Positions 7,939 through 63,447 of a stretch of 64,000 nucleotides of DNA are shown piece by piece (positions within the stretch are counted from its first letter, which is position 1; each line of letters begins with the position of its first letter). The position numbers and the translations under genes were made by a program. Location: the IMG/VR virus record IMGVR_UViG_3300020147_000065, positions 157,109 to 221,108 of that record; one strand, written 5' to 3'. Below the pieces are notes generated by a model. That model did not search any database. It was given only the letters and a program-made list of their open reading frames with translations, and was not told the DNA's origin.

Positions 7939-8079
7939 ATGGCTGCTTTGACTGATGAACAGAAGAAATTGGGTTGGGTCGAAGGCACTTCCGCAGAGTT
8001 TCTCGGACTCACACCCGAAGAAGAAGCTCAGGTGCTCGAAGAAATGGAAGGTAAACCAGAAGCAGAGGACTCGGAGTAA
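7939..8079 (+). CDS. 46-aa peptide resembling the N-terminus of XRE/HigA-type antitoxins
   Basis: MAALTDEQKKLGWVEGTSAEFLGLTPEEEAQVLEE...; GAGG RBS. Confidence 0.55.
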   Translation: MAALTDEQKKLGWVEGTSAEFLGLTPEEEAQVLEEMEGKPEAEDSE

Positions 8080-8180: not shown

Positions 8181-8312
8181 ATGTCCATGCTCGATTTTTT
8201 GGCCGATATGCTCGGCGGGGAAGCCACGATGAACGATGTCCAGGCCCAGGAAGCCGCTGTCCTTGCGGCTGCGCGAGAAAAAGACGCCGAAGATTACGAC
8301 GACGAGGATTAG
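8181..8312 (+). CDS. 43-aa acidic peptide MSMLDFLADMLGGEATMNDVQAQEAAVLAAAREKDAEDYDDED
   Basis: GGAG RBS; paralog of 7694..7804. Confidence 0.65.
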   Translation: MSMLDFLADMLGGEATMNDVQAQEAAVLAAAREKDAEDYDDED

Positions 8313-8682
8313 TTTATCACTAATCAGGGAAAGGGAAAGTCCGAAAGACTTTCCCTTTTCTTTTTTGTCTGCCCCCCCCCCTACCATCCCACTGATAAAA
8401 TCTCCCCGTGGGTGGCGATCATATGGAAGATGGAAGGCCAGTGAACCATGTCAAAAATAAAATCGAGAATCACTTTCACCTCCCCCTTGCAGCCATTGTC
8501 ACACCTTGTTAAAATTTAAGGTATGAAATGGCCCAAGATAATTATCACCACGCGGAAGTATATCTACGGTATCCAATCACAAACCCATTGTCAATGGTTG
8601 GTGATGTGCATAAACAGCATCTAAGGGAGTAGATGCTGCCCCCCCCCTTGCAGCACTTTCATAAATTGCGTATAATTTAATT

Positions 8683-40943: not shown

Positions 40944-41024
40944 AATCAGCGACCTTACTACGTAGCGTTCTAAAGCAGGGAAGTTCTTGCGAGAGTTTGC
41001 AACCTCTCGTTTTTCCTGCTTAGA

Positions 41025-41417
41025 TGGAGATGTGGGTAATTGAAACCCAGTCTTGAAGTAGTAACAAAGTAGTTTATAGGCTTAGACTGTCTTTTAGTTT
41101 AGCTTTCCACGGGGCGCAGTCGTTCTAATCGTATCGGAAAGCGAGTCACTAATTCATACCGACTAATGACTGTCGTTTGGTGCTTACATTAATTACCTCT
41201 ATCTTACATCGTAAGCAATTCAGTAGAGGTTTGCTTAAACTAAATTAAGCTGCGAGACGGGCCATCTGAGCCTTAGGAGCCATAACTCCACCGAACAAAG
41301 AAACACCCTGATTAAAAACGTTGCCGTTTATAGCATGTCAGCCGTTTAAGGTGTCTGCCAACGAACACCGCCTAAATTCCTTTGATAACAAATCTTCAAT
41401 CGAAACCTGTCATCCCC
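41025..41417 (-). ncRNA. ssrA: tmRNA
   Basis: 5' GGGGATGACAGGTTTCGA; 3' T-arm plus CATCTCCA with G3:U70; tag frame 41325..41245 GNVFNQGVSLFGGVMAPKAQMARLAA*. Confidence 0.93.
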
Positions 41418-44896: not shown

Positions 44897-45038
44897 ACTT
44901 CAATCATATCGCAAACCACGGGGTTTGTCAAGGGTTCTCCAAAACTTTACCAATTAGTCACATGGTTGGGTAATGAGTGTGCAAGTAATGGAGAACAAGT
45001 TGACATTTGCAATCAAATTTGCTATAATCTTTCTATAT

Positions 45039-45109
45039 GCCTCAGTAGTTCAATGGTAGAACGACTCTTTCGTACAGAGTAAACGCGGATTCGATTTCTG
45101 TCTGGGGCT
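45039..45109 (+). tRNA. tRNA-Thr(CGT)
   Basis: TTCGTAC loop. Confidence 0.85.
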
Positions 45110-45146
45110 TGGAGGGTACCACTAATGATGATCGCAGAAAGAAACC

Positions 45147-45512
45147 ATGCATCCATCTTTTTTTGAACACTTGCACCCGTTTATCCAGAAACCAGTTGAG
45201 GTTTCTGTAGTAGTGAATGACAAACACATCGCCAGCGGCAAGCGTGGCGATGCCAGTAATTGCCCGTTATGTTTAGCAATAAAAGAACATCTTCTTAGTG
45301 GAGATGCGTTAGTTACTTCTAAACATGTCATGTTTTATGACAGGACGTTTGATCGTTCTGATATAGACATGATTCTGGGTAAAGGTCGAATTGCAATGGT
45401 ATTACTACCACCTGCAATAGCTGAACTAATCAAAGAGTACGAAGAAGGGGAGCACTTTGTCCCATTCAAGATAGAACTCAATTTTCCAGCACAACTCTTG
45501 ACATCTGGCTAA
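45147..45512 (+). CDS. hypothetical protein
   Basis: G.RGD...CP..LAI motif. Confidence 0.65.
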   Translation: MHPSFFEHLHPFIQKPVEVSVVVNDKHIASGKRGDASNCPLCLAIKEHLLSGDALVTSKHVMFYDRTFDRSDIDMILGKGRIAMVLLPPAIAELIKEYEEGEHFVPFKIELNFPAQLLTSG

Positions 45513-45545
45513 AGTGTTGCTATAATCAGATTCAGGAGACATAAG

Positions 45546-45884
45546 ATGTCATTTGAATCAAATTGGCGAGAATTTCTCGTAGAACATAAAGAACTTAATT
45601 ACGCAAACGTGCCCACTACCGACGAAGACTATTTTGTTAATAGTCGGGAGCTTCTTCACGAAGACTTGAAACAGATGGAAGACGAAGGTTCTATTGTCTT
45701 TCGCTTCTATCCGCCTCAAGATAAAGGCGCACTTCTGAATTATGATGAAAATCGGAGAATCCCCAGGTATTATGATATGCGTTTTCAGGCTTACGCACAC
45801 TACTTAGGGCAACAAGGAAAGACCTTAAATAAAGCGGAGAGATGGGTTGGGGAAACCCTTCACGTAGAGGTTTCCATAAGATAA
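45546..45884 (+). CDS. hypothetical protein
   Basis: TTGACA/TATAAT promoter; AGGAG RBS. Confidence 0.7.
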   Translation: MSFESNWREFLVEHKELNYANVPTTDEDYFVNSRELLHEDLKQMEDEGSIVFRFYPPQDKGALLNYDENRRIPRYYDMRFQAYAHYLGQQGKTLNKAERWVGETLHVEVSIR

Positions 45885-45961
45885 TGAGCCTCGCTAAGTC
45901 CATTTAATATCACTCCTAACTTAAAGATCGCCCAGCCCTGCGAGGGGGCTGGGCTTCTTAT

Positions 45962-46369
45962 TTACTTGTTCTTGCGCTTTGTTTCCACGCCTTTAGGCTT
46001 TCGTCCTTCGGCTACCCATACTTCGGCAGCTTCTTTAGCTTTTTCGAGGTCGTGAAGAACAAAGGTTTTGGAGTTCTTTCCATCAAGTTCAAGGGCAACG
46101 TGGTAGGTGCTGCGTCCAACGCTGATAAAAGCATCTCGCTTATTATCTTCGCAGACGGGCGTATAACCAATCATGGAGCCACTATCTACGACGCGCATAA
46201 CGCAGTCTCGTATTACCTGCACGTCTTTGTCTTTCTTTAGTGATACAGCTTCACTAAGAACACTGACTTCTTTTTGTGCTGCCGCCAACTGTGTGTTACT
46301 AAGGCTTAACGCAGCTTCCAAATGACTTGTTGTTTGGTTCAACAGATTAACTAAGATTTTGTTTTCCAT
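45962..46369 (-). CDS. hypothetical protein
   Basis: TTGACA/TATAAT promoter; leaderless. Confidence 0.7.
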   Translation of the reverse strand: MENKILVNLLNQTTSHLEAALSLSNTQLAAAQKEVSVLSEAVSLKKDKDVQVIRDCVMRVVDSGSMIGYTPVCEDNKRDAFISVGRSTYHVALELDGKNSKTFVLHDLEKAKEAAEVWVAEGRKPKGVETKRKNK

Positions 46370-46564
46370 GTAGTAAATTATACTAACTTACGTAGAATAT
46401 GTCAAGTGCGCTACCGCACAAAAATATTTTCTTTGGAACCTTGACAAGTGGTTGGTAGTTCAGTATAATCTATTATGTTCCTCTCCGAGATACGTGGTGT
46501 GCAAGTCAGGACTCTGCGCGGATAGAAGGCTGGGAAGGTGACTGGTCCCAGAAGGAACATCTTT

Positions 46565-46638
46565 TGCCCGGTGGTGCAGTGGTAGTTTCACGTCTGACTC
46601 TGGATCAGAAGACAGAGGTTCGAATCCTCTCTGGGCAG
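46565..46638 (+). tRNA. tRNA-Gln(CTG)
   Basis: CTCTGGA loop. Confidence 0.9.
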
Positions 46639-46684
46639 TAGACTTGACAAACTCCGTCAAGTGTAGTAAGATTAGTATCGTTAT

Positions 46685-46756
46685 TGAGGATTCGCCAAGT
46701 GGTAAGGCATCTGATTTTGGATCAGACATTCGGAGGTTCGAACCCTTCATCCTCAA
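46685..46756 (+). tRNA. tRNA-Gln(TTG)
   Basis: TTTTGGA loop. Confidence 0.9.
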
Positions 46757-46820
46757 TCGGTTTAGTTAGTTGTGCGCTATTGCAGACACAGCGGTAATCA
46801 CTCCGCCGACTAAACCTAAT

Positions 46821-46895
46821 GCCGGAGAAGCTAAGTGGCAAAGCACCACCTTTGTAACGTGGATTAAGTGGGTTCGATTCCCATCTCCGGCCCCA
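46821..46895 (+). tRNA. tRNA-Thr(TGT)
   Basis: TTTGTAA loop. Confidence 0.85.
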
Positions 46896-46962
46896 ATTCC
46901 CGTGGGTAGTAAAGGGTAATGTATGAGAGTATGTTACAAAGGGCTATCCACGGGGTTATAAC

Positions 46963-47056
46963 GGATGGTTGTCCGAGCGGTTTATGGAATGCGTTTGGAA
47001 AACGTATGAGGCATTTCATAGTGTCTCCGCAGGTTCGAATCCTGCACTATCCGCCA
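46963..47056 (+). tRNA. tRNA-Ser(GGA)
   Basis: TTGGAAA loop, long variable arm, GCCA. Confidence 0.9.
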
Positions 47057-47057
47057 A

Positions 47058-47110
47058 GAGAAGCTAACAGCATTAAAATGATTCAGCTTATATCAAAAAC
47101 AATGCTTCTC
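47058..47110 (+). ncRNA. ACAGCAA-stem RNA copy 1
   Basis: GAGAAGC-TA-ACAGCA...GCTTCTC directly after the tRNA-Ser CCA. Confidence 0.6.
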
Positions 47111-47156
47111 GACCTTGACAATTCAATAAAAGTGTAGTAAAATCTACTACATATCT

Positions 47157-47232
47157 GGTGGCGTAGAATAGCGGCTAATTCGCTTGTCTGTCGAACAAGT
47201 TATCGCGGGTTCGAGTCCCGTCGTCACCGCCA
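47157..47232 (+). tRNA. tRNA-Asp(GTC)
   Basis: CTGTCGA loop, GCCA. Confidence 0.9.
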
Positions 47233-47233
47233 G

Positions 47234-47384
47234 AAGAAGCGCACAGCAATCTGCAAAATAAAGCATTTGTGTGAAAAACAAAACAATGTAGGTTCGAATC
47301 CTACCCTGCCCACCAATTAGTGGCAACTACTATCTTAGTTGTATTCAACTGGGCAGGTAGCTAAACTGGAAAACAACGCTTCTT
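47234..47384 (+). ncRNA. ACAGCAA-stem RNA copy 2 enclosing a circularly permuted tRNA-Phe(GAA)-like domain
   Basis: AAGAAGCG/CGCTTCTT stem; 3' tRNA part 47261-47315 precedes 5' part 47351-47371. Confidence 0.75.
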
Positions 47385-47389
47385 GTCTT

Positions 47390-47463
47390 CGGGACGTGGG
47401 CCAAAGGTAGGCCGCAACATTTGGGATGTTGACATCGGGCGAGTTCGATTCTCGCCGTCCCGA
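47390..47463 (+). tRNA. tRNA-Pro(TGG)
   Basis: TTTGGGA loop. Confidence 0.88.
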
Positions 47464-47613
47464 TTTGCAGTAAATTAGACTTGTGGTGGCCGAGCGGAAT
47501 GGGACATTTGTAGCATAGCCGTTAACTGCTACTTGTCGTAAGGACATAAACCACTTCGACTTCCGACGGGAAGCGTTTTTCGAGAATTGGACGGTGTTCC
47601 GCAACTGCATATT

Positions 47614-47687
47614 GTCTCCGTAGTTCAGATGGACAGAACGACAACCTCCTAAGTTGTATGTCGCAGGTTCGAATCCTGCCGGGGTCA
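47614..47687 (+). tRNA. tRNA-Arg(CCT)
   Basis: CTCCTAA loop. Confidence 0.9.
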
Positions 47688-47699
47688 TTGGAGATTATA

Positions 47700-47963
47700 A
47701 TGTTTGGTGTAGCGAAAGAAAGATTAGTCAATGTCTTAGCTCTATTGCAACATAGTCGTTGCGCCTATGGTTCAAGTGTTAAAGAACCTACTCAGCGATG
47801 CGATTGCAAGTATGTAGCTAAAGACGCCGAAACGCTCGGACGTTTCGGCTCAGAGAGTGGGTCAACCTGTCCTGAGTTGTCTATGGCTTACGCGATCATC
47901 AATTCAATGACTGATCGAGAATACGAAAGATTTTGTAAACGGGCTGGAATTAGCTTGACATAG
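47700..47963 (+). CDS. Cys-rich hypothetical protein
   Basis: GGAG RBS; CDCKY...CPEL. Confidence 0.65.
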   Translation: MFGVAKERLVNVLALLQHSRCAYGSSVKEPTQRCDCKYVAKDAETLGRFGSESGSTCPELSMAYAIINSMTDREYERFCKRAGISLT

Positions 47964-47994
47964 CCCGTGGAAAGTGATATAATTTAAAGTAATT

Positions 47995-48070
47995 GGGGGC
48001 ACATGTTCCAAGGGGGCGAGGAACCTTTGCAAGGTTCATGTGAAGAGTTCGATTCTCTTTGTCTCCACCA
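47995..48070 (+). tRNA. tRNA-Ala(TGC)
   Basis: TTTGCAA loop, G3:U70. Confidence 0.85.
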
Positions 48071-48182
48071 ATTCAGATTCGCTGACTGCACTGGCCTGAA
48101 ATATCGGTTATCACGCGAATGAGGTTAAGGTAGGCGCCTATACTTAACGCTAAGGGGTAAGTTAATAAACTCCCTTACATTT

Positions 48183-48253
48183 GGGGCTTTCGTTCAAGGG
48201 GAGGACGGGAGTATGGCATACTCTCAATCTGGGTTCGAGTCCCAGTTGCTCCA
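48183..48253 (+). tRNA. tRNA-Ala(GGC)
   Basis: ATGGCAT loop, G3:U70. Confidence 0.8.
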
Positions 48254-48257
48254 TTTT

Positions 48258-48332
48258 GGAAGGCAGGGCAAATGGTCAGCCGTCTTCGTGACAAGAAGAA
48301 TATAGCAGGTTCGATTCCTGTGCCGTCCACCA
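48258..48332 (+). tRNA. tRNA-Val(GAC)
   Basis: GTGACAA loop, ACCA. Confidence 0.8.
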
Positions 48333-48528
48333 ATCCGACCAGTGAACTGAATCCCACTTCGGCTGTACAGCGAGGCGTGAAAGGTGGGTAAAGGATAGCC
48401 AAAGTTCACCCTGAATAAAACAGGACAAATTGATACTGAGAGTTCTATACAGGCTTTGAAGCGTGAACGACCCGCACCATCTTAGAAGGTAGGCAATCCT
48501 GTAAAGGTACTATAGAGGCTCTCATTAT

Positions 48529-48601
48529 GTCCGCGTAGTGAAACTGGACATCACGCAACTCTACGAAAGTTGTAATGTAGGTTCGAATCCTGCCGTGGAT
48601 A
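48529..48601 (+). tRNA. tRNA-Arg(ACG)
   Basis: CTACGAA loop. Confidence 0.9.
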
Positions 48602-48751
48602 TTTTAGCGTGGCCCTTGACAGGCCACGCGGAACGTAGTATAATCTATTGCGTTGTAAACAAAGTCATGGGAAAAAGCAGAAGTCCTTTTCAACAGAAAT
48701 GTTGGGATTTGAAAGTTAGGTATGGAGAGAAATCTTCCGACAATTTGGAAT

Positions 48752-48826
48752 AGCAGGGTACCGTTCACGGTGAGCCGGACTTGACTGTTAATCAAGGATA
48801 GATGGGTTCGATCCCCATCCCTGCTG
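48752..48826 (+). tRNA. tRNA-Asn(GTT)
   Basis: CTGTTAA loop; atypical D-arm. Confidence 0.8.
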
Positions 48827-48834
48827 TAAAACAT

Positions 48835-48911
48835 GGTGGATGAAGCTAACCGGTCAGGCGCTTGATTGTGGCTCAAGTACATAGGGAGTTCAATTCTCCT
48901 CATTCACCCCA
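48835..48911 (+). tRNA. tRNA-His(GTG)
   Basis: G-1:C73, TTGTGGC loop. Confidence 0.9.
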
Positions 48912-48915
48912 TTAT

Positions 48916-48988
48916 GCTCCGGTAGCTGAGATGGTTCAAGCATCCGCCTGAAAAGCGGAGGACGAGGTTTCGAGCACCTCTCGGAGTA
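48916..48988 (+). tRNA. tRNA-Phe(GAA)
   Basis: CTGAAAA loop. Confidence 0.85.
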
Positions 48989-49153
48989 CTTAGCAGATAA
49001 TGAGCGCGATTGGCCACCGTGGTGAGTTATCTGTAGGGATAGAAAACTTCTGTCAGCCCCTAACCATAAGACAGATAATGGCTGTGAGAGAGTGCCCCGA
49101 CGCTGGGTGAAGCAAACGGAGAAAGACACTTCCCTGCTGCTCTCACATTTTAT

Positions 49154-49222
49154 CGCAGGGAGGCAAGGCGCCCAACGTGGCTCATAACCATGTTCTTGTC
49201 GGTTCGATTCCGACCTCTGCAA
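49154..49222 (+). tRNA. tRNA-fMet-like (CAT)
   Basis: C1:A72 mismatch, CTCATAA loop, reduced D-arm. Confidence 0.7.
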
Positions 49223-49298
49223 TGGCCCTTAATGCAGACTAACGACCTGCTCGACGTGTAACCCACGCCGATCCTCTAAGTGTAGGAGACGGGACACT

Positions 49299-49372
49299 CG
49301 GAATGTGGCTCAGCTTGGTAGAGCACACGCATGGGGTGCGTGAGGTCGAAGGTTCAAATCCTTTCATTCCGA
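49299..49372 (+). tRNA. tRNA-Pro(GGG)
   Basis: ATGGGGT loop. Confidence 0.88.
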
Positions 49373-49441
49373 CGGTATCTCAGGCCACTTGCACATCAGT
49401 GTAGGTACGGGGAAGGCTTCAAGGCCTTCCCCTTTAAATTT

Positions 49442-49509
49442 GGCGGCTGCATAGGATGCGATCAGGAATCATAATCCAGATTTTAACAGTTCGAGTCTGT
49501 TAGCCGCTA
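49442..49509 (+). tRNA. atypical tRNA-Met(CAT), reduced D-arm
   Basis: GGCGGCT/AGCCGCT acceptor, ATCATAA loop. Confidence 0.55.
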
Positions 49510-49707
49510 TGTGGATAAAGAAACTATACAAGCCATATTAGTGACAGTTTTCTACGGAGTGTTATTTATATGGTTGTTCTGGTCAATTGGTCAGTCATTG
49601 AAGGATTGTGATTTTGGGCAGGGGCCTGATCCAAAAGGGAATAACGACTGGTGGTGATCTGCCCCCCCCCCTTGCAGAACCTTGAAAATCGGAGTATAAT
49701 TTAATAC

Positions 49708-50001
49708 ATGAAGCCACCATTAGATGCAACTGGAAGAGAAATCTCCGTGGGTAGCAAATTGATGTACTGTATTGATGATGTATGGTCTTTCGGTGAAGTC
49801 GTAGAACTCAAGGAAAGAAAAAGATGTTATCAAGAATACATCGGTGTCGTTGTGAGCAAATGTTCTGTTAATCCTTACTGGTCAGAAATAAAAGCCGGTA
49901 AATCTGAGTTAATGTTTCCTCAAAAAGCAATCATTGTAGAGAATTTTCTATTTCTTCCAAATGATTTCTTAAAAAGACTTGACGAGGCCCGTGAAAAGTG
50001 A
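49708..50001 (+). CDS. hypothetical protein
   Basis: C-tract promoter; leaderless. Confidence 0.7.
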   Translation: MKPPLDATGREISVGSKLMYCIDDVWSFGEVVELKERKRCYQEYIGVVVSKCSVNPYWSEIKAGKSELMFPQKAIIVENFLFLPNDFLKRLDEAREK

Positions 50002-50026
50002 TATAATCTTTAGTGGTGATGAAATT

Positions 50027-50191
50027 ATGATGGGTTTAGGTGGACAAGAACTTTGGATAGTATTAATAATTGTGATGGTTCTCTTTGGTGGCTCGAAAGT
50101 TCCACAGTTAATGAAGGGAATCGGTGAAGGTATCCGAGAATTACGTAAGGGTGCAGAATACGACCCTGAAACACAAAAGACCGGCATCTAA
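50027..50191 (+). CDS. tatA: twin-arginine translocase TatA/E family subunit
   Basis: MGLGGQELWIVLIIVMVLFGGSKVPQLMKGIGEGIRELRK. Confidence 0.92.
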   Translation: MMGLGGQELWIVLIIVMVLFGGSKVPQLMKGIGEGIRELRKGAEYDPETQKTGI

Positions 50192-50202
50192 GGATGCCAC
50201 AA

Positions 50203-50279
50203 CACGGCGTACTCAAGCGGTCTAAGAGGCAGGACTTTCAATCCTGTAATCACGGGTTCAAATCCCGTCGCCGTGACCA
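50203..50279 (+). tRNA. tRNA-Glu(TTC)
   Basis: CTTTCAA loop. Confidence 0.9.
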
Positions 50280-50358
50280 ATGGGAGATAAGCCTGTACCA
50301 CGCTTTGCTTAATGGTTGGTACCCATTATGTAAGGTGAGGTGATGCTCCCCTCAAAAT

Positions 50359-50432
50359 GGCCCTGTCGTCTAATTGGAACAGGATAACACCCTCTCAAGG
50401 TGTAGAACCGGGTTCGAAACCCGGTGGGGCTA
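50359..50432 (+). tRNA. tRNA-Glu(CTC)
   Basis: CTCTCAA loop. Confidence 0.88.
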
Positions 50433-50437
50433 TTGTT

Positions 50438-50512
50438 GGCCGGATAGCGCAATTGGCAGGAGGCGTTGGACTCAAAATCCAAACAGTGCGGGTTCGAATC
50501 CCGCTCCGGCTA
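50438..50512 (+). tRNA. tRNA-Leu(CAA), short variable loop
   Basis: CTCAAAA loop. Confidence 0.85.
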
Positions 50513-51817: not shown

Positions 51818-51889
51818 GCGCTTGTAGTTCAGTGGTAGAACACCGACTTCTAGATTCGGGTGTGGCGGGTTCGAATCCTGCCGAGCGCA
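51818..51889 (+). tRNA. amber suppressor tRNA (CTA)
   Basis: CCGAC-TTCTAGA-TTCGG arm in a canonical body. Confidence 0.7.
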
Positions 51890-52020
51890 CTTCATCTTAA
51901 TTAAGGAGCCTACAATGAGCAAGTAGATTGACTTCATGTAGCTGTGTTCAAATAAATCACCACCCGTGGTTAGCCAGATTTCACAAACAACTGACTGACA
52001 ACAAACGGAGATTTAATACA

Positions 52021-53674: not shown

Positions 53675-54199
53675 ATGAGCATGAAACCCTTCCTGATTGA
53701 AGAAGCAGAAGCGATGGAGTTTGTTCAAGAACGACACAATCCTAAACAGAAGTATGGTAAATATCCTTATTTCTTCCACCTCTATCAAGTCAATTCTGTT
53801 GCTAAAGAATTTAACTTAAACGACCGTGTTATCCTTCTTTCTACGTGGCTGCATGATGCGTTGGAAGATACTGCAACAAACCCAAGTGACCTATCACAAG
53901 CATTCGGTGAAGACGTAGCCAGGACAGTTTATTATGTTACCGATCATAAGGGTTGGAATAGGGCTGAGAGGCATGAAAGGCTTTATAGAGAGATGGTAAG
54001 CCATCCACGGGCTGTAGCAGTTAAGCTCTGTGACCGCTTGGCAAATGTTCGCTTCGGTAACACTGCTAAGGATGGCTGTTCTCCAAATTATAAACGCGAA
54101 TATGCTGACTTCAAAGGTTACCTGTGGGGTAAAGGTGGAGAATTTGAAGGACGGCTGGGAAAAATTTGGAATGAACTTGATTTACTTTTACTTCGATAA
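53675..54199 (+). CDS. HD-domain (p)ppGpp hydrolase-like (Mesh1/SAH)
   Basis: H..QKYG..PY..HL; LHDALEDT; VKLCDRLANVR. Confidence 0.85.
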   Translation: MSMKPFLIEEAEAMEFVQERHNPKQKYGKYPYFFHLYQVNSVAKEFNLNDRVILLSTWLHDALEDTATNPSDLSQAFGEDVARTVYYVTDHKGWNRAERHERLYREMVSHPRAVAVKLCDRLANVRFGNTAKDGCSPNYKREYADFKGYLWGKGGEFEGRLGKIWNELDLLLLR

Positions 54200-54604: not shown

Positions 54605-55774
54605 ATGACAGCAATCCAACTCCCAACACTTTATTGTCGCCGTCAGGACGGCGGAATCAACCAGTGGACTATCGAAGTTGATGGTAGCCGCAAAAGAACT
54701 ATCTCAGGTAAGGTTGGCGGAAAACTCGTCGAATCTGCATGGGAACAATGTGTAGTAAAGAACGAAGGTCGCTCTAATGCGACCACACCCGAATCACAGG
54801 CTTTAGCACAGGCTCAGTCTGACTGGAATAAGAAAAAGGCACGAAAGTATTCGGAGAGTCCCGATACCGTTGATACTGATAAAATTTATCAGTGTATGTT
54901 AGCGAAAGACGTTCGCGGTGAATGGGATAAGAAAACCGAAACGTGGAAGAAACCCCACTGGCCGAAGATTGAGAAGGCATTGAATGAGGGGCAGAAAATC
55001 TTTGTTCAAGCTAAACTTGATGGTATTCGTTGTATCGCCAATAAAGATGGTTTATGGTCGCGTGAAGGAAAGAGATTCGTTTCTTGTCCTCACATCGAAG
55101 AAGCACTCAAACCTTTGTTTGCTGGACAACCCGATTTGATTCTCGACGGTGAGCTATTCAACTTTGAACTGCGTAACGACTTCAATAAAATCGCTTCGCT
55201 TATCAAGCGTCAGAAACCAACAGCAGAGGATATTGCTGAAACTGCTGAAAATGTGCAGTATCATATTTACGACGTTCCTTCTGTGGATGAATTGTTTGAG
55301 AAGCGGTGTCGTGGCTATAATGCGCTCTGCCGTGTTGCTGATAAACCTTTCATCGTTCCAGTCGAAACTTACGAAGTTAGCTCTCTGCAAGAGATTCACG
55401 ACCTCTACGACCTCTTTGCTGAGACACACAAACAGGAAGGCGCGATTATTCGCTTCAACGTGAAGTATCTGAATAAGCGCACCGACCAACTTCTGAAATA
55501 CAAGGTTTTCGTGGACGAAGAATTTGTAATTGTGGACGTTCACAGCGGAGTAGGTAAAGCCGCTGACCTCGCTTGTAAAATGTCCTTCGTGAATGAGGAC
55601 GGTAATCCTTTTGAGGCGACAACAACAGGTAGTGCAGAAACCCGACAGGGTTATCTAAAAGACCGCAATAATTTAATCGGTAAACGTGCAACGGTGCGTT
55701 ACGGAAATCGAACTCCTGATAAGAATGTCCCGCGTTGGGGAAGAATAATCGCTATACGTGATTACGAAAGTTAG
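54605..55774 (+). CDS. ATP-dependent DNA ligase
   Basis: QAKLDGIRC, LDGELF, YHIYDV, EGAIIR, LLKYK. Confidence 0.95.
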   Translation: MTAIQLPTLYCRRQDGGINQWTIEVDGSRKRTISGKVGGKLVESAWEQCVVKNEGRSNATTPESQALAQAQSDWNKKKARKYSESPDTVDTDKIYQCMLAKDVRGEWDKKTETWKKPHWPKIEKALNEGQKIFVQAKLDGIRCIANKDGLWSREGKRFVSCPHIEEALKPLFAGQPDLILDGELFNFELRNDFNKIASLIKRQKPTAEDIAETAENVQYHIYDVPSVDELFEKRCRGYNALCRVADKPFIVPVETYEVSSLQEIHDLYDLFAETHKQEGAIIRFNVKYLNKRTDQLLKYKVFVDEEFVIVDVHSGVGKAADLACKMSFVNEDGNPFEATTTGSAETRQGYLKDRNNLIGKRATVRYGNRTPDKNVPRWGRIIAIRDYES

Positions 55775-56573: not shown

Positions 56574-57887
56574 ATGCCACAAATAATTGATGAAGCGCGT
56601 CTGATATGTGCTAAATTCAAAGACGGGAAGTTAGTACATAATAAATTTTACAACATGACATTATACGACGACAACCGAGTGCGAATTTGGTATGGGCGAT
56701 ATGTTGAGGATGGCAGCGGTGGACTGAAAACACAGAGCGACGAAACGGTTCCTGGCGGTCGCGCTTTGTTTGATTCAAAATATCGTGAAAAGACCGGCCC
56801 AAGAAAAGGTTACAAGCCGCTCCCAGTCGTAGCGAACACAACTTCAGATAGTAAAATAGTTGTGGCTAAAGGCACACTTGCTGAGATTGCAGCAAAGCAA
56901 ATCAAGACTAACTCCGATGAAGTGTTTATGCTTATCAAACATCTCGCAGATGTTAATGTGCATCAAATTACTTCACAAACCTCTATCAAGTATGACGCAG
57001 CAACGGGTAGCTTTTCAACACCTTATGGTCTTGTTACTTCTAATGGTATTGATAAGGGGCGGACACTTTTAGGTGAGATTCATAGTCTGCTAACCACGGG
57101 CACCTTCGATAAGCGTTTTGAGACACTTGTTGAAGAATATATGACAATCATTCCACAAAGTGTTGGTCGCCGTTCAATCGGCCCGAAAGAAGTCTTTCCT
57201 AATCTTGATAAAGTCAAGTCACAAAACGACGTGCTTGATGCTCTTGAAGCATCTTTAACCGAGGCCAATAAACCTAAGAAGGAAGAAAAGAGCGACGAAG
57301 CGCAGGAAGTTGAGAAGTTGTTCGACTGCGTATTAGAGATTGTCACAGACCCCGCAGAATATAACCGCGTGGAAAGCCTTTATACTTCTTCTCGTAAAGA
57401 AATGCACGTAGCAGCACGTTTAAAACTACGTAAGGTTTACCGTGTTGTTATTAACCACATGACGCAAGCCTACAATAACCGTAAGGTTAAAGGTAATGAG
57501 CAAGAGTTATGGCATGGAACATCACCGGCTAACGTGCTTTCGATTCTTAAATCAGGCTTCATGATTTCGCCGCCTTCAACGGCGGCAATCGCGGGTAAAA
57601 ACTTTGGTTACGGTGTTTATTTCGCTAATGCCTCAACCAAGAGTTTAAACTACGCACACGGTTATTGGTCAGGCACTTATGCTCGGAAATGCTTCTTGTT
57701 TTTAAACAACGTGGCTCTTGGTAACTATTATGTTCCTGAGAACACCACGCGAAGCAATCCACCAAAAGGCTACGATTCATACTGGGCACAGGCGGGTAAA
57801 TCCTCCTGGTTACAGAATGATGAGATTGTGATTTTCGACACAACTCAGATTGAGCCTACTTACTTGCTGGAATTTGAGGACAACTAA
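56574..57887 (+). CDS. PARP-like ADP-ribosyltransferase (WGR + helical + catalytic)
   Basis: NKFY..WYGR; LWHGT; FGYGVYFA; NDEIVIF (H-Y-E triad). Confidence 0.92.
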   Translation: MPQIIDEARLICAKFKDGKLVHNKFYNMTLYDDNRVRIWYGRYVEDGSGGLKTQSDETVPGGRALFDSKYREKTGPRKGYKPLPVVANTTSDSKIVVAKGTLAEIAAKQIKTNSDEVFMLIKHLADVNVHQITSQTSIKYDAATGSFSTPYGLVTSNGIDKGRTLLGEIHSLLTTGTFDKRFETLVEEYMTIIPQSVGRRSIGPKEVFPNLDKVKSQNDVLDALEASLTEANKPKKEEKSDEAQEVEKLFDCVLEIVTDPAEYNRVESLYTSSRKEMHVAARLKLRKVYRVVINHMTQAYNNRKVKGNEQELWHGTSPANVLSILKSGFMISPPSTAAIAGKNFGYGVYFANASTKSLNYAHGYWSGTYARKCFLFLNNVALGNYYVPENTTRSNPPKGYDSYWAQAGKSSWLQNDEIVIFDTTQIEPTYLLEFEDN

Positions 57888-59141: not shown

Positions 59142-59215
59142 GCTAAGACGTATGCGACAGGTAAAGCAGCTAAAAGCGGTGTGTTTTGCGGGTTCGATTC
59201 CCGCCGTCTTAGTCA
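59142..59215 (+). ncRNA. tRNA-like unit lacking a normal anticodon arm
   Basis: CTAAGACG/CGTCTTAG acceptor-like stem plus GCGGG-TTCGATT-CCCGC T-arm. Confidence 0.55.
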
Positions 59216-59285: not shown

Positions 59286-59353
59286 AGGGGAGTAGCTCAC
59301 CGTTAGAGCGTCCGTCTGGAAGGTAGCAGGTTAAATTCCTGCCTCCCCTACCA
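59286..59353 (+). ncRNA. tRNA-like unit with truncated anticodon arm and CCA end
   Basis: AGGGGAG/CTCCCCT-ACCA; D and T arms intact; anticodon arm only TCC-GTCT-GGA. Confidence 0.7.
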
Positions 59354-59354
59354 A

Positions 59355-59455
59355 AAGATAGTTACAGCAATCTTTACAGCATAGCTTAATGGATAAGCAA
59401 AAGTCTTCAAAACTTTAGATTGCGGGTTCGACTCCCGCTGCAATAAAACTATCTT
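59355..59455 (+). ncRNA. ACAGCAA-stem RNA copy 5 carrying an acceptor-less tRNA(UCA) mimic
   Basis: AAGATAGTT/AACTATCTT stem; D-arm, AAAGT-CTTCAAA-ACTTT and T-arm inside. Confidence 0.75.
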
Positions 59456-59461
59456 GTAAAT

Positions 59462-59542
59462 TGGGATGAAGTTCTGAGGTGTTCGGAATATAGGCTCTCC
59501 GCGGAGTCGAAGGGGTAGGTTAAACTCCTACCGTCCCAGCCA
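59462..59542 (+). ncRNA. tRNA-like unit with 6-nt anticodon loop and CCA end
   Basis: TGGGATG/CGTCCCA-GCCA; GGCTC-TCCGCG-GAGTC. Confidence 0.6.
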
Positions 59543-59708: not shown

Positions 59709-61190
59709 ATGGCACGAATGAATAGCCTTGTGGCTGCGCTCAACACGACTGTAACTGAGAAGGGCGCTCTCACCAACCGCTCAAGCGGTTCTGCAATGTT
59801 GGATTTCTACGGACAGATGGGCGCTATGCGCGGTCAGTCTGACTCCAACGTAAACTCTACGTTCTCCGCGGCTTTTGCTGCTGAGCGAGCACTTGCTCTC
59901 CGTTCTCTCTTCTATCTCCGTGACGTTCGCGGTGGTAAGGGTGAGCGAAAGACCTTCCGCACCATCCTTGATTGGTTGGTAAAGAATGACCCACAGGTTG
60001 TAATCAATAACCTCGATAACATCTCGTTCTATGGTCGTTACGACGACCTTGCCCGTTTGATTAACTGCGGAAACACTAAGGTGAAGAACGCAGTGGTCGC
60101 AAAGGTCAAGGCTCAGCTTGCGGCTGACAAGAACGACGAACACCCTTCGCTCTTGGCTAAGTGGATGCCCTCCATTAACGCCTCGTCCACAGAGTCTAAG
60201 TCTCTGGCGAAGAAGTGGATTCGTGCTCTCGGTATGTCCGAGGCCGAATATCGTAAGACTCTTTCTGCGCTTCGTGCTCAGATTAAGGTTGTCGAGCGTT
60301 ATATGTGCGCCCGTGATTGGGATTCGATTAACTTCGAGCACGTCCCATCGAACGCTGCAAAGCTGTATCGTAAGGCGTTTAAGACCCGCGCACCTGAGCG
60401 TTACTCTGAGTATCTCGGTGCCGTAGAGAAGGGTGAGAAGACCATCAAGGCTTCTACTCTTTACCCCTACGACCTCGTTCGTCCTTACTTGAAGGCCGGT
60501 GGCTATTACGGTGGACGTGTAAGCGTTGACCGCACTATCGAAGCACAGTGGAAGGCTCTGCCTAACTACCTCGCTGACGATGACACCGACTTCTTGGTAA
60601 TCGCGGACACTTCGGGTTCGATGTTCGACCACTCGTTGGATTTCTTGCCCATCTGCGTATCAGTGTCTTTGGCACTATACTCGGCTGAGCGTAACCGTGG
60701 AGCCTTCAAGGGCTTCTGGATGAACTTCTCAACTTCTCCTACTTTCCAGCAGGTTCGTGGTGAGACTTTGGCTGACAAGATTAGCAACATGGACTACTCT
60801 AACTGGTGTGGTTCTACCAACGTTGACAAGGCTTTCGAGTTGATTCTTTCTCGCGCTCGCGCGGCGAATGTTCCAGCCGACGAAATGCCTAAGATGTTGA
60901 TGGTCATTAGTGATATGCAGTTTGACGGTCACTGCACCGTGACGAACCTTGAGACTTGGAAGAAGAAGTTCGCAACCTACGGTTACGAGGCTCCAACCAT
61001 CGTCTTCTGGAACGTAAACGCACGTCCTGGCCAGTCGCCAATTACTGTAAACGACAAGGGTGTAATGCTTGTTAGCGGTGCGTCCGCAGAGACATTCCGC
61101 GCTGTCCTTTCCGGTAAGAACTTGTCGGCTTACGACGCAATGGTTAATACTCTCAGCAATGAGCGTTACGACCGTGTTGTTGTAGACTAA
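59709..61190 (+). CDS. DUF2828 / TROVE-like vWA domain protein (Ro60-like architecture)
   Basis: TEKGA..SSG..LDF; LFYLRDVRGGKGER; LAKWMPS; LYPYDLV; ADTSGSM; SDMQFD; FWNV. Confidence 0.9.
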   Translation: MARMNSLVAALNTTVTEKGALTNRSSGSAMLDFYGQMGAMRGQSDSNVNSTFSAAFAAERALALRSLFYLRDVRGGKGERKTFRTILDWLVKNDPQVVINNLDNISFYGRYDDLARLINCGNTKVKNAVVAKVKAQLAADKNDEHPSLLAKWMPSINASSTESKSLAKKWIRALGMSEAEYRKTLSALRAQIKVVERYMCARDWDSINFEHVPSNAAKLYRKAFKTRAPERYSEYLGAVEKGEKTIKASTLYPYDLVRPYLKAGGYYGGRVSVDRTIEAQWKALPNYLADDDTDFLVIADTSGSMFDHSLDFLPICVSVSLALYSAERNRGAFKGFWMNFSTSPTFQQVRGETLADKISNMDYSNWCGSTNVDKAFELILSRARAANVPADEMPKMLMVISDMQFDGHCTVTNLETWKKKFATYGYEAPTIVFWNVNARPGQSPITVNDKGVMLVSGASAETFRAVLSGKNLSAYDAMVNTLSNERYDRVVVD

Positions 61191-62871: not shown

Positions 62872-63447
62872 ATGACACACATCACAAAAGACGTTAATGG
62901 ACTTCCTTTCACTGTTGTTCATGCTTCTGCTCTCGATATTCCTGCTGACTCTATAGTAAACGCGGCCAATTCTGGTCTAAGAGCCGGTAGCGGTATCTGT
63001 GGGGCGATTTATAAAGCCGCAGGTGCCGAAATCCTGAATCGTTATGTCCAAACTCGATTCCCTAATGGGAGTAATACCGGACAATCTGTTATTACCCCTG
63101 CTTTTGGACTTCAAAATCACAGGCGTATTATCCACTCTGTCGGCCCACGATACGATGACCATACTCCACAGGAAGCGGCGCATTATCTGACAATGGCTTA
63201 TTCCTCTGCTATCTATGCTGCTAATTTGGTTGGTAATTCCGTAACGTTCTGTGGGCTATCCACGGGGATTTACGGATACCCTCTTGATGAAGCCGCGTGG
63301 GTTGCTATAAACACTGTAGCCTCACACCTTTATGGTATTGGCTCAAATATGGTTGTGAACTTTGCTCTATTTCAACCAGAAGAGTATCAGGCTTTTGCTA
63401 CTGCTCTCATAAACTGTCAATTTGGTGGGATTACAAGTAATGCCTGA
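62872..63447 (+). CDS. macrodomain ADP-ribose hydrolase
   Basis: IVNAANSGL..GSGICGAIYKAAG; IIHSVGP; LSTGIYGYP. Confidence 0.93.
   Translation: MTHITKDVNGLPFTVVHASALDIPADSIVNAANSGLRAGSGICGAIYKAAGAEILNRYVQTRFPNGSNTGQSVITPAFGLQNHRRIIHSVGPRYDDHTPQEAAHYLTMAYSSAIYAANLVGNSVTFCGLSTGIYGYPLDEAAWVAINTVASHLYGIGSNMVVNFALFQPEEYQAFATALINCQFGGITSNA

What the first reader, a model, noticed from the sequence alone, without database searches (positions are those of the whole stretch)
47234..47384. Circularly permuted tRNA-Phe(GAA)-like gene broken in the D-loop
Seen: the 3' part AAGC-A-TTTGT-GTGAAAA-ACAAA-ACAAT-GTAGG-TTCGAAT-CCTAC-CCTGCCC-ACCA (47261-47315) comes before the 5' part GGGCAGG-TA-GCTA-AACTGG (47351-47369). 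GGGCAGG pairs perfectly with CCTGCCC, and the ACAGCAA stem clamps the broken D-loop. Established: permuted tRNA genes are known from some algae and archaea; YrlA is permuted at a different position. Inference: RNase P and 3' trimming of the 35-nt linker would give a two-piece, chargeable tRNA with a protein-binding handle on its D-loop, or a precursor for ligation.
Basis: partly seen in the sequence, partly recalled or inferred. Interest (0 to 1): 0.85.

Follow-up and report, generated by a model that had tools for sequence, protein, structure and literature searches.

The report
Permuted tRNA-like Y RNA in phage
A soil jumbo phage carries a back-to-front tRNA look-alike held shut by a short helix; it is most likely not a decoding tRNA but a partner RNA for the phage's own Ro60-like protein, one member of a widespread phage RNA family that seems not to have been described.

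Summary
The sequence is as described. At 47260-47315 a tRNA 3' part (D-stem strand, anticodon-type hairpin, T arm, acceptor strand, ACCA) comes before the matching 5' part (47351-47369), with a 35-nt linker between them. Rejoined, ARAGORN calls it tRNA-Phe(GAA), and it outscores 24 of the phage's 36 tRNAs. A second assembly shows the same order.

Two corrections. The body derives from tRNA-Tyr. The clamp is AAGAAGCG/CGCUUCUU (47234-41/47377-84), and ACAGCAA (47243-49) is an unpaired conserved motif.

This helix-plus-ACAGCAA module occurs five times in the window, always 10 nt after a tRNA CCA. It also lies beside DUF2828 genes in unrelated phages (30 copies against 4.4 expected; the helix covaries). 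Long forms elsewhere carry T arm, acceptor hairpin and D arm in the YrlA order, as here. The window's DUF2828 protein folds like Ro60. A normal-order homologue in phage LR756511 has a helix at the same D-loop site, with 4 compensatory changes and none disruptive.

Best reading: a Y-RNA-like tRNA mimic of a Ro60-like system, probably cut by RNase P into a two-piece RNA ending in CCA. A decoding tRNA is unlikely. This is a new variant of a known kind.

The parts
47115..47143 (+). sigma-70-type promoter-like site (TTGACA, 17 nt, TAAAAT) in front of tRNA-Asp, the element and tRNA-Pro
   Evidence: 11 of 12 matches
47157..47232 (+). tRNA-Asp(GTC) with encoded CCA; its 3' end lies 1 nt before the clamp
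47234..47241 (+). 5' strand of the terminal helix (clamp), AAGAAGCG
   Evidence: homologous to the strand UUGAAGC of the D-loop arm in LR756511
47243..47249 (+). conserved unpaired motif ACAGCAA, 10 nt after the CCA of tRNA-Asp
47261..47264 (+). AAGC, D-stem 3' strand; 3 pairs with 47360-47362
47266..47282 (+). 5-bp hairpin with 7-nt loop GUGAAAA (anticodon arm of the rejoined tRNA; sits where YrlA has its 'V' arm)
47288..47304 (+). T arm GUAGG-UUCGAAU-CCUAC
47305..47315 (+). acceptor 3' strand CCUGCCC plus ACCA
47316..47350 (+). 35-nt linker closing the acceptor stem. It starts AUU like the trailers of the phage's other CCA-encoding tRNAs and holds a small hairpin 47323-47342
47351..47369 (+). 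acceptor 5' strand GGGCAGG, U8 A9, D-stem 5' strand GCUA, D-loop AACUGG (A14, G18, G19)
47370..47376 (+). A-rich joiner AAAACAA before the 3' strand of the helix, as in the family consensus
47377..47385 (+). 3' strand of the terminal helix CGCUUCUU, followed by the family's near-invariant G
47390..47464 (+). tRNA-Pro(TGG); RNase P cutting at its 5' end would free the 3' end of the element
47057..47112 (+). paralogous short form right after tRNA-Ser: helix GAGAAGC/GCUUCUC, ACAGCAU, no tRNA-like cargo
   Evidence: 41.5 bits
59216..59282 (+). short-form copy (helix UAAGGUUC/GAACCUUG, ACAGCAA) between two aberrant tRNA-like genes
   Evidence: 38 bits
59354..59457 (+). long-form copy: helix of 8-9 bp, ACAGCAA, cargo is a normal-order tRNA(UCA)-like gene
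59709..61190 (+). DUF2828 + DUF7788 protein, a structural homologue of Ro60 (HEAT ring plus vWA domain with D-x-S-x-S)

Best explanation
The 156-nt stretch 47233-47388 is a Y-RNA-like noncoding RNA of the YrlA type. It has a terminal helix made by its two ends, with a conserved single-stranded ACAGCAA beside that helix. This module carries a tRNA mimic derived from tRNA-Tyr, whose acceptor stem is closed by a linker. The gene therefore reads as a circularly permuted tRNA.

Inferred steps:
1. It is transcribed from the promoter at 47115 together with tRNA-Asp and tRNA-Pro.
2. It is freed when those two tRNAs are processed.
3. The helix-plus-ACAGCAA module is the handle for the phage's Ro60-like DUF2828 protein (59709-61190).
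4. The tRNA-like domain presents a tRNA shape to some tRNA-binding partner, such as a nuclease, a repair or modification enzyme, or a host defence.
5. The domain has a 7-bp acceptor stem, a canonical T arm and an encoded ACCA followed by the phage's usual AUU trailer. RNase P probably cuts 5' of G47351, and the linker is then trimmed back to CCA. The result is two pieces (about 83 and 39 nt) held together by the acceptor stem, the D stem and the terminal helix.

Shown here: the anatomy, the repeated module, its covariation, its linkage to DUF2828 genes, the Ro60 fold of DUF2828, and a homologue with compensatory changes. Not shown: expression, processing, binding and function.
For: 1. tRNA-like quality and correct assembly.
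2. The module 'helix, 1-2 nt, ACAGCAA ... A-rich, helix, G' occurs 5 times in the window, each exactly 10 nt after a tRNA CCA/UCA end (5 of 12 motif copies against 0.34 expected). It occurs 4 times in the syntenic relative L157 (4 of 9 against 0.23 expected).
3. The same module lies on the coding strand beside DUF2828 genes in Mycobacterium, Bacillus, Escherichia, Listeria, Klebsiella, Ralstonia and Enterococcus phages: 30 copies against 4.4 expected, 30 on the + strand against 2 on the - strand.
4. In 13 short forms, 96.7% of helix cells are paired, all 7 pairs change on both sides, 0 of 500 shuffles reach this, and slid registers give 46% or less.
5. A covariance model built from them finds untrained copies. 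It finds none in 215 kb of control tRNA-bearing loci.
6. Long forms in Krypton555, Tsamsa, EC6, RSP15 and Enterococcus A2 have the order helix, ACAGCAA, spacer hairpin, T arm, acceptor hairpin, U(A/G), D arm, helix, as here.
7. NCCA follows the acceptor 3' strand in the window element, in RSP15 and in both L093 RNAs; Krypton555 has CCA there.
8. The 11 best PDB fold matches of the DUF2828 model (pLDDT 87) are all Ro60/TROVE structures, E 4e-8 to 3e-5. The vWA D-x-S-x-S is invariant.
9. A normal-order homologue in LR756511 has a helix inserted at the same D-loop place. Over 28 pairs there are 4 compensatory changes, 1 one-sided change and 0 disruptive ones. The base of the helix, GCUU/AAGC, is identical.
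10. Precedents: YrlA cut by RNase P with CCA addition (PMC4201824); phage Ro60 binding phage Y-like RNAs (PMC12135203).
Against: - No expression, processing or binding data exist. No RNA run was found.
- The element is a singleton. No second copy of this permuted order turned up in viral, metagenome or genome collections.
- It lies 12.3 kb from the DUF2828 gene. Chen et al. required 4 kb for YrlA.
- Rfam's YrlA model does not match it, and it lacks the GNCGAA-type Ro-binding motif.
- My covariance model cannot span the 127-nt cargo, so membership of the ACAGCAA family rests on shared parts, not on a score.
- The motif's linkage to DUF2828 is confounded with linkage to tRNA arrays, because DUF2828 genes sit inside such arrays.
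- The energy model prefers an alternative in which CACA pairs with UGUG over the weak A/U hairpin: -39.6 against -32.0 kcal/mol for the two-piece form.
- Only two sequences support the covariation of the tRNA-like part.
Confidence: 0.55

Rival explanations
1. A working decoding tRNA made in two pieces, or joined by a ligase after the ends are cut. It would be charged with Phe, or another amino acid, and used on the ribosome.
For: - The rejoined cloverleaf is of high quality, with U8, A14, G18 G19, U33, a GAA anticodon, A73 and an encoded CCA.
- The trailer after CCA looks like those of the phage's real tRNAs.
- Two-piece tmRNA and cleaved YrlA show that bacteria can process permuted tRNA-like genes.
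- RNA ligases occur in relatives: PF09414 in L157, and RtcB near DUF2828 in Listeria phage LP-064.
Against: - The body is of the tRNA-Tyr type with the long variable arm lost.
- It has G32. In the homologue the loop differs at 3 of 7 positions, has A33 and carries another anticodon, while every stem is kept.
- A normal tRNA-Phe(GAA) already exists at 48916-48989.
- An 8-bp helix plus 19- and 7-nt joiners would protrude at the elbow.
- The D stem has 3 pairs.
- Sister RNAs of the same architecture have closed acceptor loops and cannot be charged.
Confidence: 0.12
2. Evolutionary debris. A tRNA gene was duplicated in tandem inside a spacer hairpin, and the outer halves have decayed or been deleted. 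The transcript is simply degraded.
For: - The stretch 47244-47270 resembles the 5' part plus its tail at 47358-47386 (22 of 28 positions, p about 0.03-0.05).
- The paralogue at 47057-47112 looks like the same unit with its core deleted.
- The phage carries several aberrant tRNA-like genes.
- No second example of this exact order is known.
Against: - The decay would be oddly one-sided. Every feature needed for the permuted fold is intact, and the rejoined RNA scores above most of the phage's own tRNAs.
- All disruptive differences lie in the parts that are not needed.
- The helix and all the stems are kept by compensatory changes against a homologue in a very different 595-kb phage.
- The clamp belongs to a family with strong covariation.
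- The architecture matches long forms in five other phages.
Confidence: 0.2
3. The helix-plus-ACAGCAA unit is only a processing or punctuation signal of phage tRNA arrays, for example a nuclease site that sets the 3' end of the tRNA upstream. The tRNA-like cargo has no role of its own, and DUF2828 is linked only because it lies in tRNA arrays.
For: - The fixed distance of 10 nt from the CCA of the upstream tRNA holds in 9 copies in two phages.
- Other spacers of the array also form end-to-end helices without the motif: 46759-46820 and 46896-46962.
- The short forms have no cargo.
Against: - In Listeria, Mycobacterium and Enterococcus phages the hairpins stand in tandem next to the DUF2828 gene with no tRNA between them.
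- tRNA-like cargo in the same order recurs in at least six phages.
- Control tRNA arrays give no match.
Confidence: 0.1

Closest known systems
YrlA (Y RNA-like A; Rfam RF02553), the tRNA-mimicking partner RNA of bacterial and phage Ro60/Rsr
   Same: - A terminal helix is formed by the two ends.
- The tRNA-like domain reads T arm, then acceptor-type hairpin, then U8-A9 and the D region.
- It is encoded on the same strand as a Ro60-type protein, in a phage rich in tRNA genes.
- A 7-bp acceptor stem makes RNase P cutting plausible. This was shown for M. smegmatis YrlA, with CCA addition (PMC4201824).
   Different: - There is no match to the Rfam model.
- The motif is ACAGCAA, not GNCGAA.
- The partner protein is DUF2828/DUF7788, not Pfam TROVE.
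- The D stem is closed from the far side of the terminal helix, so the opening lies in the D loop rather than in the anticodon stem.
- A full 5-bp/7-nt anticodon-type hairpin is present.
- ACCA is encoded, followed by a 35-nt linker.
- It lies 12 kb from the protein gene.
[quoted passage not shown] 2007; review PMC3978253)
   Same: The 3' part lies upstream of the 5' part. An intervening sequence joins the acceptor ends. The leader and trailer pair with each other. The rejoined sequence is a good cloverleaf.
   Different: Those genes use a bulge-helix-bulge motif, the tRNA splicing endonuclease and a ligase. They pass through a circular intermediate and give ordinary decoding tRNAs. Here the ends form a plain 8-bp helix, the setting is a bacteriophage, and decoding does not seem to be the conserved role.
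Two-piece (permuted) tmRNA of alpha-proteobacteria, cyanobacteria and others (Rfam RF04321)
   Same: A permuted gene in bacteria. T arm, acceptor 3' strand and CCA come first, then a spacer, then the acceptor 5' strand. The spacer is removed to leave two base-paired pieces. The element gives a weak match to this part of the model (17.5 bits).
   Different: There is no tag reading frame and no pseudoknots, and the score is far below the gathering score of 47. The phage has an ordinary one-piece tmRNA at 41022-41417.
Interrupted tRNA-Tyr-like gene of uncultured phage LR756511.1 (291,311-291,437, minus strand; L087 8312-8438)
   Same: This is the nearest relative of both halves. It has the same acceptor stem, the same T-arm stem, the same 3-bp D stem with a 13:22 mismatch and a 5-nt variable loop. 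A helix with the same base (GCUU/AAGC) leaves the D loop after a 7-nt joiner, and an A/C-rich motif follows the GAAGC strand.
   Different: The gene order is normal, with open acceptor ends. The D-loop helix is capped by a hairpin that is repeated elsewhere in that genome. No CCA is encoded. The loop is CAGUAAA, and the motif is UACAAAC rather than ACAGCAA.

Membership tests
Circularly permuted tRNA gene (algal/archaeal kind) | 3' half encoded upstream of the 5' half, joined across the acceptor ends by an intervening sequence | tested here: met
   47260-47315, then a 35-nt linker, then 47351-47369
Circularly permuted tRNA gene (algal/archaeal kind) | Rejoined sequence forms a canonical cloverleaf | tested here: met
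   ARAGORN calls tRNA-Phe(gaa), 75 nt; threshold rank above 24 of 36 tRNAs
Circularly permuted tRNA gene (algal/archaeal kind) | Bulge-helix-bulge motif where leader and trailer meet | tested here: not met
   The ends form an uninterrupted 8-bp helix flanked by joiners of 19 and 7 nt. No 3-nt bulges 4 bp apart
Circularly permuted tRNA gene (algal/archaeal kind) | Circular RNA intermediate, then a contiguous mature tRNA | not testable with these tools
   No RNA run holds the region
YrlA / bacterial Y RNA | Terminal stem formed by the 5' and 3' ends | tested here: met
   47234-41 with 47377-84; homologous helices covary
YrlA / bacterial Y RNA | tRNA-like domain in the order T arm, acceptor-like hairpin, D arm | tested here: inconclusive
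   The T arm, the closed acceptor stem and U8-A9 plus the D 5' strand and loop come in that order. However, the D 3' strand lies upstream of the hairpin, not directly after the D loop
YrlA / bacterial Y RNA | Match to the Rfam RF02553 covariance model | tested here: not met
   No YrlA hit at E up to 10 in 47200-47620
YrlA / bacterial Y RNA | GNCGAA(N)G motif near the 5' end (PMC4201824) | tested here: not met
   The 5' region reads GAAGAAGCGCACAGCAA; ACAGCAA stands in that position
YrlA / bacterial Y RNA | Encoded within about 4 kb of a Ro60 orthologue, on the same strand | tested here: inconclusive
   The strand is the same, but the distance is 12.3 kb. Sister copies lie 0.15-0.5 kb upstream of the gene. 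The protein is Ro60-like by fold, not by Pfam TROVE
YrlA / bacterial Y RNA | Bound by the Ro60-type protein | not testable with these tools
   Needs pull-down or gel-shift experiments
ACAGCAA hairpin RNAs beside DUF2828 genes (family defined here) | Helix of 7-9 bp whose 5' strand is followed after 1-2 nt by ACAGCAA | tested here: met
   8 bp, gap of 1 nt
ACAGCAA hairpin RNAs beside DUF2828 genes (family defined here) | A-rich run before the 3' strand and a G after it | tested here: met
   AAAACAA at 47370-76 and G at 47385, compared with the consensus
ACAGCAA hairpin RNAs beside DUF2828 genes (family defined here) | Starts right after a tRNA 3' end (CCA, 10 nt, motif in this phage lineage) | tested here: met
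ACAGCAA hairpin RNAs beside DUF2828 genes (family defined here) | Significant score with the covariance model R1 | tested here: inconclusive
   Only 9.6 bits, with a wrong pairing. The model was built from short forms and cannot span the 127-nt cargo. The paralogue at 47056-47112 scores 41.5 bits
Two-piece tmRNA | Gathering-score match and a tag reading frame | tested here: not met
   17.5 bits against 47; only 39 nt follow the acceptor 5' strand before tRNA-Pro
Canonical tRNA-Phe | Contiguous gene recognised by tRNA finders, with a usual anticodon loop | tested here: not met
   Not called by ARAGORN in the genomic order; G32; the 3' end is that of tRNA-Tyr

The most novel reading that the evidence does not exclude
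After RNase P cutting, the two-piece RNA is aminoacylated at its ACCA end. A Ro60-like phage protein would then be tethered through a charged tRNA mimic to EF-Tu, the ribosome or an aminoacyl-tRNA-sensing host defence. In the extreme form it is a true D-loop-split decoding tRNA, the first split or permuted tRNA outside algae and archaea. The encoded NCCA after the acceptor strand in several independent sister RNAs suggests that a free CCA end matters.
Probability: 0.12. Interest if true: 0.9.

Novelty: new variant of a known kind. Interest (0 to 1): 0.62.

Why it matters
Ro60 and its Y RNAs are known from animals, about 5% of bacteria and a few phages with TROVE-domain proteins. This work suggests a second, much wider phage branch. 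It consists of a DUF2828 protein with the Ro60 fold plus small RNAs marked by a covarying helix and the motif ACAGCAA.

That branch is present in well-studied phage groups: Felixounavirus, the Listeria P100 group, Bacillus Tsamsa, Mycobacterium phage Krypton555 (Lumosvirus), Enterococcus and Klebsiella phages. Some of these RNAs carry tRNA mimics.

The element examined here is the most tRNA-like of them. It keeps an anticodon-type arm and an encoded ACCA, and it is opened in the D loop. It therefore links ordinary tRNA-Tyr genes, a D-loop-interrupted tRNA in a 595-kb phage, and YrlA-type mimics.

Because cultured phages carry the system, direct tests are possible. One can ask what a phage Ro60-like particle does, whether in RNA repair, tRNA surveillance or counter-defence, and whether permuted tRNA mimics are cut and charged.

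Tried and rejected
1. Searches for near relatives of the element: exact and degenerate pattern scans of viral contigs, metagenome contigs and genome contigs. They returned only the source contig and chance matches (L084 is coding sequence). One scan was wasted on a miscounted spacer.
2. Megablast of the region against GenBank phages gave nothing useful.
3. The ligase as a handle for syntenic relatives: the closest hits sit on tiny contigs. The DUF2828 protein later gave the syntenic relative L157. L157 lacks the Asp-Pro segment and has no permuted copy.
4. Misassembly: rejected.
5. Recent copy of the phage's own tRNA-Phe: rejected, since the acceptor and T arm are unrelated.
6. Phage attachment site carrying a tRNA 3' fragment: rejected, because a matching 5' part follows and no integrase is nearby.
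7. Second tmRNA: rejected.
8. Self-cleaving ribozyme or HDV-like fold for the LR756511 insert: considered because of apparent crossing pairs, but RNAfold gives a simple nested arm and Rfam gives no hit. I left this open.
9. General rule that all spacers of the array form end-to-end helices: true for only 4 or 5 of about 20 spacers.
10. Scoring the element with model R1: fails because of the long cargo.
11. Sequence search of DUF2828 against PDB: no hit. Only the fold comparison shows the Ro60 relation.
Full report
SETTING. The window is the last 64 kb of a 221,108-bp soil viral contig (IMGVR_UViG_3300020147_000065 = Ga0196976_1000013). It carries 36 tRNA genes and a tmRNA, along with many perfect sigma-70-type promoters. 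The finding lies between tRNA-Asp (47157-47232) and tRNA-Pro (47390-47464), downstream of a promoter-like site at 47115-47143.

OBSERVATION.
- Rfam's tRNA model aligns 47253-47304 to model positions 10-63 (29.7 bits).
- The permuted-tmRNA model weakly aligns the T arm, acceptor strand, ACCA, spacer and acceptor 5' strand (17.5 bits).
- When the 5' part (47351-47369) is joined to the 3' part (47260-47315), ARAGORN calls a 75-nt tRNA-Phe(gaa) with 7-, 3-, 5- and 5-bp stems.
- That call survives a threshold of 116% of default, better than 24 of the phage's 36 tRNAs, including its normal tRNA-Phe.
- A separately assembled 51.7-kb contig from the public run covers 45000-50500 without a difference, and a second soil sample holds identical fragments. 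The order is therefore real.
- One correction: ACAGCAA (47243-49) pairs with nothing. The clamp is AAGAAGCG (47234-41) with CGCUUCUU (47377-84).

ORIGIN OF THE tRNA-LIKE BODY. The 28 nt from the T arm to ACCA are identical to the 3' end of tRNA-Tyr(GUA) in 24 bacterial genomes of many phyla and in several phage tRNA-Tyr genes. All of these start GGGCAGG or GGGUAGG. The element is thus a tRNA-Tyr derivative. It has lost the long variable arm, and its loop has changed from CUGUAAA to GUGAAAA. It is unrelated to the phage's own tRNA-Phe.

A HOMOLOGUE IN NORMAL ORDER.
- The best phage match to the 3' part is in the 595-kb uncultured phage LR756511.1. There Rfam finds a tRNA (50.6 bits) with 55 extra nt in the D loop.
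- RNAfold draws the extra piece as an arm: a 7-bp helix, an internal loop and a GNRA-capped hairpin.
- The arm leaves the D loop 7 nt after G19. In the window, the clamp strand CGCUUCUU likewise starts 7 nt after G19, so the clamp occupies the same site.
- The base of the arm, GCUU/AAGC, is identical to the inner part of the clamp.
- Over 28 comparable pairs (acceptor, D, arm/clamp, anticodon-type and T stems) the two RNAs show 4 compensatory double changes, 1 one-sided change that keeps pairing, and none that breaks a pair. The 13:22 mismatch is shared.
- The loop of the anticodon-type hairpin is the least conserved part. It differs at 3 of 7 positions, with G32 in one RNA and A33 in the other.
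- The window element is therefore the circular permutation of this interrupted tRNA-like RNA: opened where LR756511 has the cap of the arm, and closed where LR756511 has its free acceptor ends.

THE CLAMP IS A REPEATED, CONSERVED MODULE.
- In the window the string 'CCA, 10 nt, ACAGCA(A/U)' occurs five times: at 47067, 47243, 59226, 59364 and 59553. Only 0.34 are expected.
- In four of the five, the 10 nt are the 5' strand of a clean 7-8-bp helix whose partner lies 30-127 nt downstream. For the 59553 copy only a helix with three G-U pairs was found, and its 3' strand is uncertain. Each unit ends 4-7 nt before the next tRNA-like gene or promoter.
- The copy at 47057-47112 is a close paralogue of the finding's two ends without the tRNA-like core. 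It keeps the helix through a G-C to A-U exchange.
- Three or four copies sit just upstream of a 493-aa DUF2828/DUF7788 gene (59709-61190), among four aberrant tRNA-like genes.
- Phage annotators call this protein 'Ro-like RNA binding protein'.

THE MODULE IN OTHER PHAGES.
- I fetched the DUF2828 neighbourhood from ten diverse GenBank phages. ACAGCAA occurs 30 times on the gene's strand against 2 on the other and 4.4 expected.
- It lies mostly in non-coding gaps beside the gene or in the adjoining tRNA array, and almost always has the same helix arrangement.
- Thirteen short forms align without help from structure. The helix columns are 96.7% paired, all seven pairs change on both sides, no shuffle out of 500 reaches this, and slid registers give at most 46%.
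- I picked these helices by searching for complementarity, which favours pairing. The common register, the shared flanks (an A-rich run before the 3' strand and a G after it) and the slid-register control argue that the signal is real.
- Model R1, built from these forms, finds further untrained copies, including in Synechococcus phage B3 and in the syntenic relative L157. It finds none in 215 kb of 24 control loci that hold tRNA genes of other phages and bacteria.
- L157 has the gene order HD, ligase, PARP, DUF2828 of the window, with DUF2828 at about 53% identity. It also shows four 'CCA, 10 nt, ACAGCAA' units, one following a normal-order tRNA-Tyr-like gene with the same acceptor stem.

LONG FORMS AND THE YrlA ARCHITECTURE.
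- In Krypton555, Tsamsa, EC6, RSP15 and Enterococcus phage A2 one copy is long. It reads helix, ACAGCAA, a spacer with a small hairpin, T arm, acceptor-type hairpin, U(A/G), D arm, A-rich joiner, helix.
- This is the order of YrlA, the tRNA-mimicking Y RNA of bacterial Ro60. The window element has the same order.
- It differs in three ways. The D stem is closed by AAGC lying before the hairpin. The hairpin is a full 5-bp/7-nt anticodon-type arm. The acceptor loop is long and begins with ACCA.
- NCCA at that place is also seen in RSP15 (GCCA) and in two tandem YrlA-like RNAs of contig L093 (ACCA, UCCA); Krypton555 has CCA there. The first L093 RNA shares the 28-nt tRNA-Tyr end.

THE PROTEIN. 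DUF2828 has no sequence match in PDB. One DUF2828 cluster in the ESM Atlas partly carries Pfam TROVE. An AlphaFold model from 42 homologues (pLDDT 87.4, pTM 0.84) has all of its 11 best PDB matches in Ro60/TROVE structures: Xenopus, human, Deinococcus Rsr and Thermus phage phiLo (E 4e-8 to 3e-5, TM up to 0.59). The vWA D-x-S-x-S motif is invariant. Phage Ro60 is known to bind phage-encoded Y-like RNAs and host PNPase (PMC12135203). Jumbo-phage surveys note TROVE proteins with a tRNA-like partner among RNA-repair genes (PMC7824862). I found no paper on the role of DUF2828.

MECHANISM (INFERRED). Co-transcription with tRNA-Asp and tRNA-Pro, followed by their processing, would release a 156-nt RNA with paired ends.
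- The helix plus ACAGCAA would bind the Ro60-like protein, and the tRNA mimic would engage a tRNA-binding partner.
- The acceptor stem has 7 bp, the T arm is canonical, and ACCA is followed by AUU as in seven other CCA-encoding tRNA genes of the phage. RNase P cutting 5' of G47351 and trimming to CCA are therefore likely, as shown for M. smegmatis YrlA.
- The two pieces would gain about -17 kcal/mol by pairing.
- The energy model favours an alternative to the weak A/U hairpin by about 7.6 kcal/mol, so the anticodon-type arm is the least secure part of the fold.

WEIGHING.
- For function: intact tRNA features, compensatory changes against a distant homologue, membership of a covarying module family, and the shared architecture.
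- Against: a single occurrence of this exact order, 12 kb from the protein gene, no RNA data, and a possible confound between linkage to DUF2828 and linkage to tRNA arrays.
- Estimated probabilities: Y-RNA-like tRNA mimic about 0.55; debris about 0.2; a decoding or ligated tRNA about 0.12; a mere array-processing signal about 0.1.

NOVELTY. Permuted tRNA-like Y RNAs next to Ro60 are known, so the kind is known. Three things appear new: the ACAGCAA/DUF2828 branch, the D-loop opening with a retained anticodon-type arm and encoded ACCA, and the link to a D-loop-interrupted tRNA-like gene. I could not exclude that the mycobacteriophage members were already counted among the 22 phage YrlA RNAs of Chen et al. 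2014.

Noticed in passing
window 47997-48070 (+): An atypical tRNA-Ala(UGC)-like gene right after a perfect promoter (47955-47983). It has G3-U70, a C-C mismatch in the acceptor stem, an odd D arm and an encoded ACCA. Rfam tRNA gives 32.9 bits; ARAGORN does not call it.
   Followed up: partly
window 59144-59215, 59286-59353, 59375-59447, 59463-59542 (+): Four aberrant tRNA-like genes in a row upstream of the DUF2828 gene. One has a 7-bp acceptor stem and T arm but no normal anticodon arm. One has a 3-bp/4-nt stump in place of the anticodon arm. One has a UCA anticodon and two acceptor mismatches. One is found by neither tool. Each is followed by an ACAGCAA unit.
   Followed up: partly
window 41022-41417 (-): Phage-encoded one-piece tmRNA (Rfam 89.4 bits).
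   Followed up: no
window 51818-51890 and 59374-59447 (+): tRNA genes with anticodons CTA (amber) and TCA (opal), that is, possible stop-codon suppressors in the phage.
   Followed up: no
window 46759-46820 and 46896-46962 (+): Two other inter-tRNA spacers fold end to end (9-bp and 13-bp helices, p 0.014 and <0.002 against shuffles) without the ACAGCAA motif. Spacer hairpins seem to be a habit of this tRNA array.
   Followed up: partly
window 47465-47612 (+): A 148-nt spacer between tRNA-Pro and tRNA-Arg. It holds a class-II-tRNA-like 5' fragment (GGUGGCCGAGCGG) and a terminator-like hairpin at 47560-47573, and its ends can pair (UGCAGU/ACUGCA).
   Followed up: no
window 53675-54199, 54605-55774, 56574-57887, 62872-63447 (+): An HD phosphohydrolase, an ATP-dependent ligase, a PARP-type ADP-ribosyltransferase with regulatory domain, and a Macro domain protein surround the Ro60-like gene. 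The relative L157 has the same set plus an RNA ligase (PF09414). This looks like an RNA-repair or ADP-ribosylation neighbourhood.
   Followed up: partly
L087 (LR756511.1 283000-299000), minus strand: 4269-4284, 6360-6460, 7924-7939, 8183-8198, 8384-8399: Six copies of a conserved hairpin ACUUGGAURCGAAAGYGUCCCC, with covarying A-U/G-C pairs. In most copies it is flanked by a variable helix and followed by UACAAAC. Copies are inserted in several tRNA-like genes and also lie between genes, and the same UACAAAC precedes ordinary tRNA 5' ends. A relative, IMGVR_UViG_3300003310_000099 (L088), has it too. Whether it is an intron, a processing signal or a protein site is unknown.
   Followed up: partly
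L087 7700-7830, minus strand: A second kind of permuted tRNA-like RNA in LR756511: T arm, a 7-bp acceptor stem closed by a GCAA tetraloop, UA, D arm, then an anticodon arm with loop CUUUUAA (Lys UUU). It gives weak Rfam YrlA and tRNA hits.
   Followed up: no
L093 (IMGVR_UViG_3300020577_004312) 6493-6606 and about 6640-6860, minus strand: Two tandem YrlA-like RNAs in front of a phage tRNA array (Rfam YrlA 38.1 bits for the second). Both have NCCA followed by a 13-16-nt loop in the acceptor hairpin. No Ro60-type gene lies on the 8.7-kb contig.
   Followed up: partly
L147 (Listeria phage LP-064) 5843-7054: An RtcB-type RNA ligase is annotated 1.3 kb downstream of the DUF2828 gene. This echoes the bacterial rsr-yrlA-rtcBA operon.
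   Followed up: no
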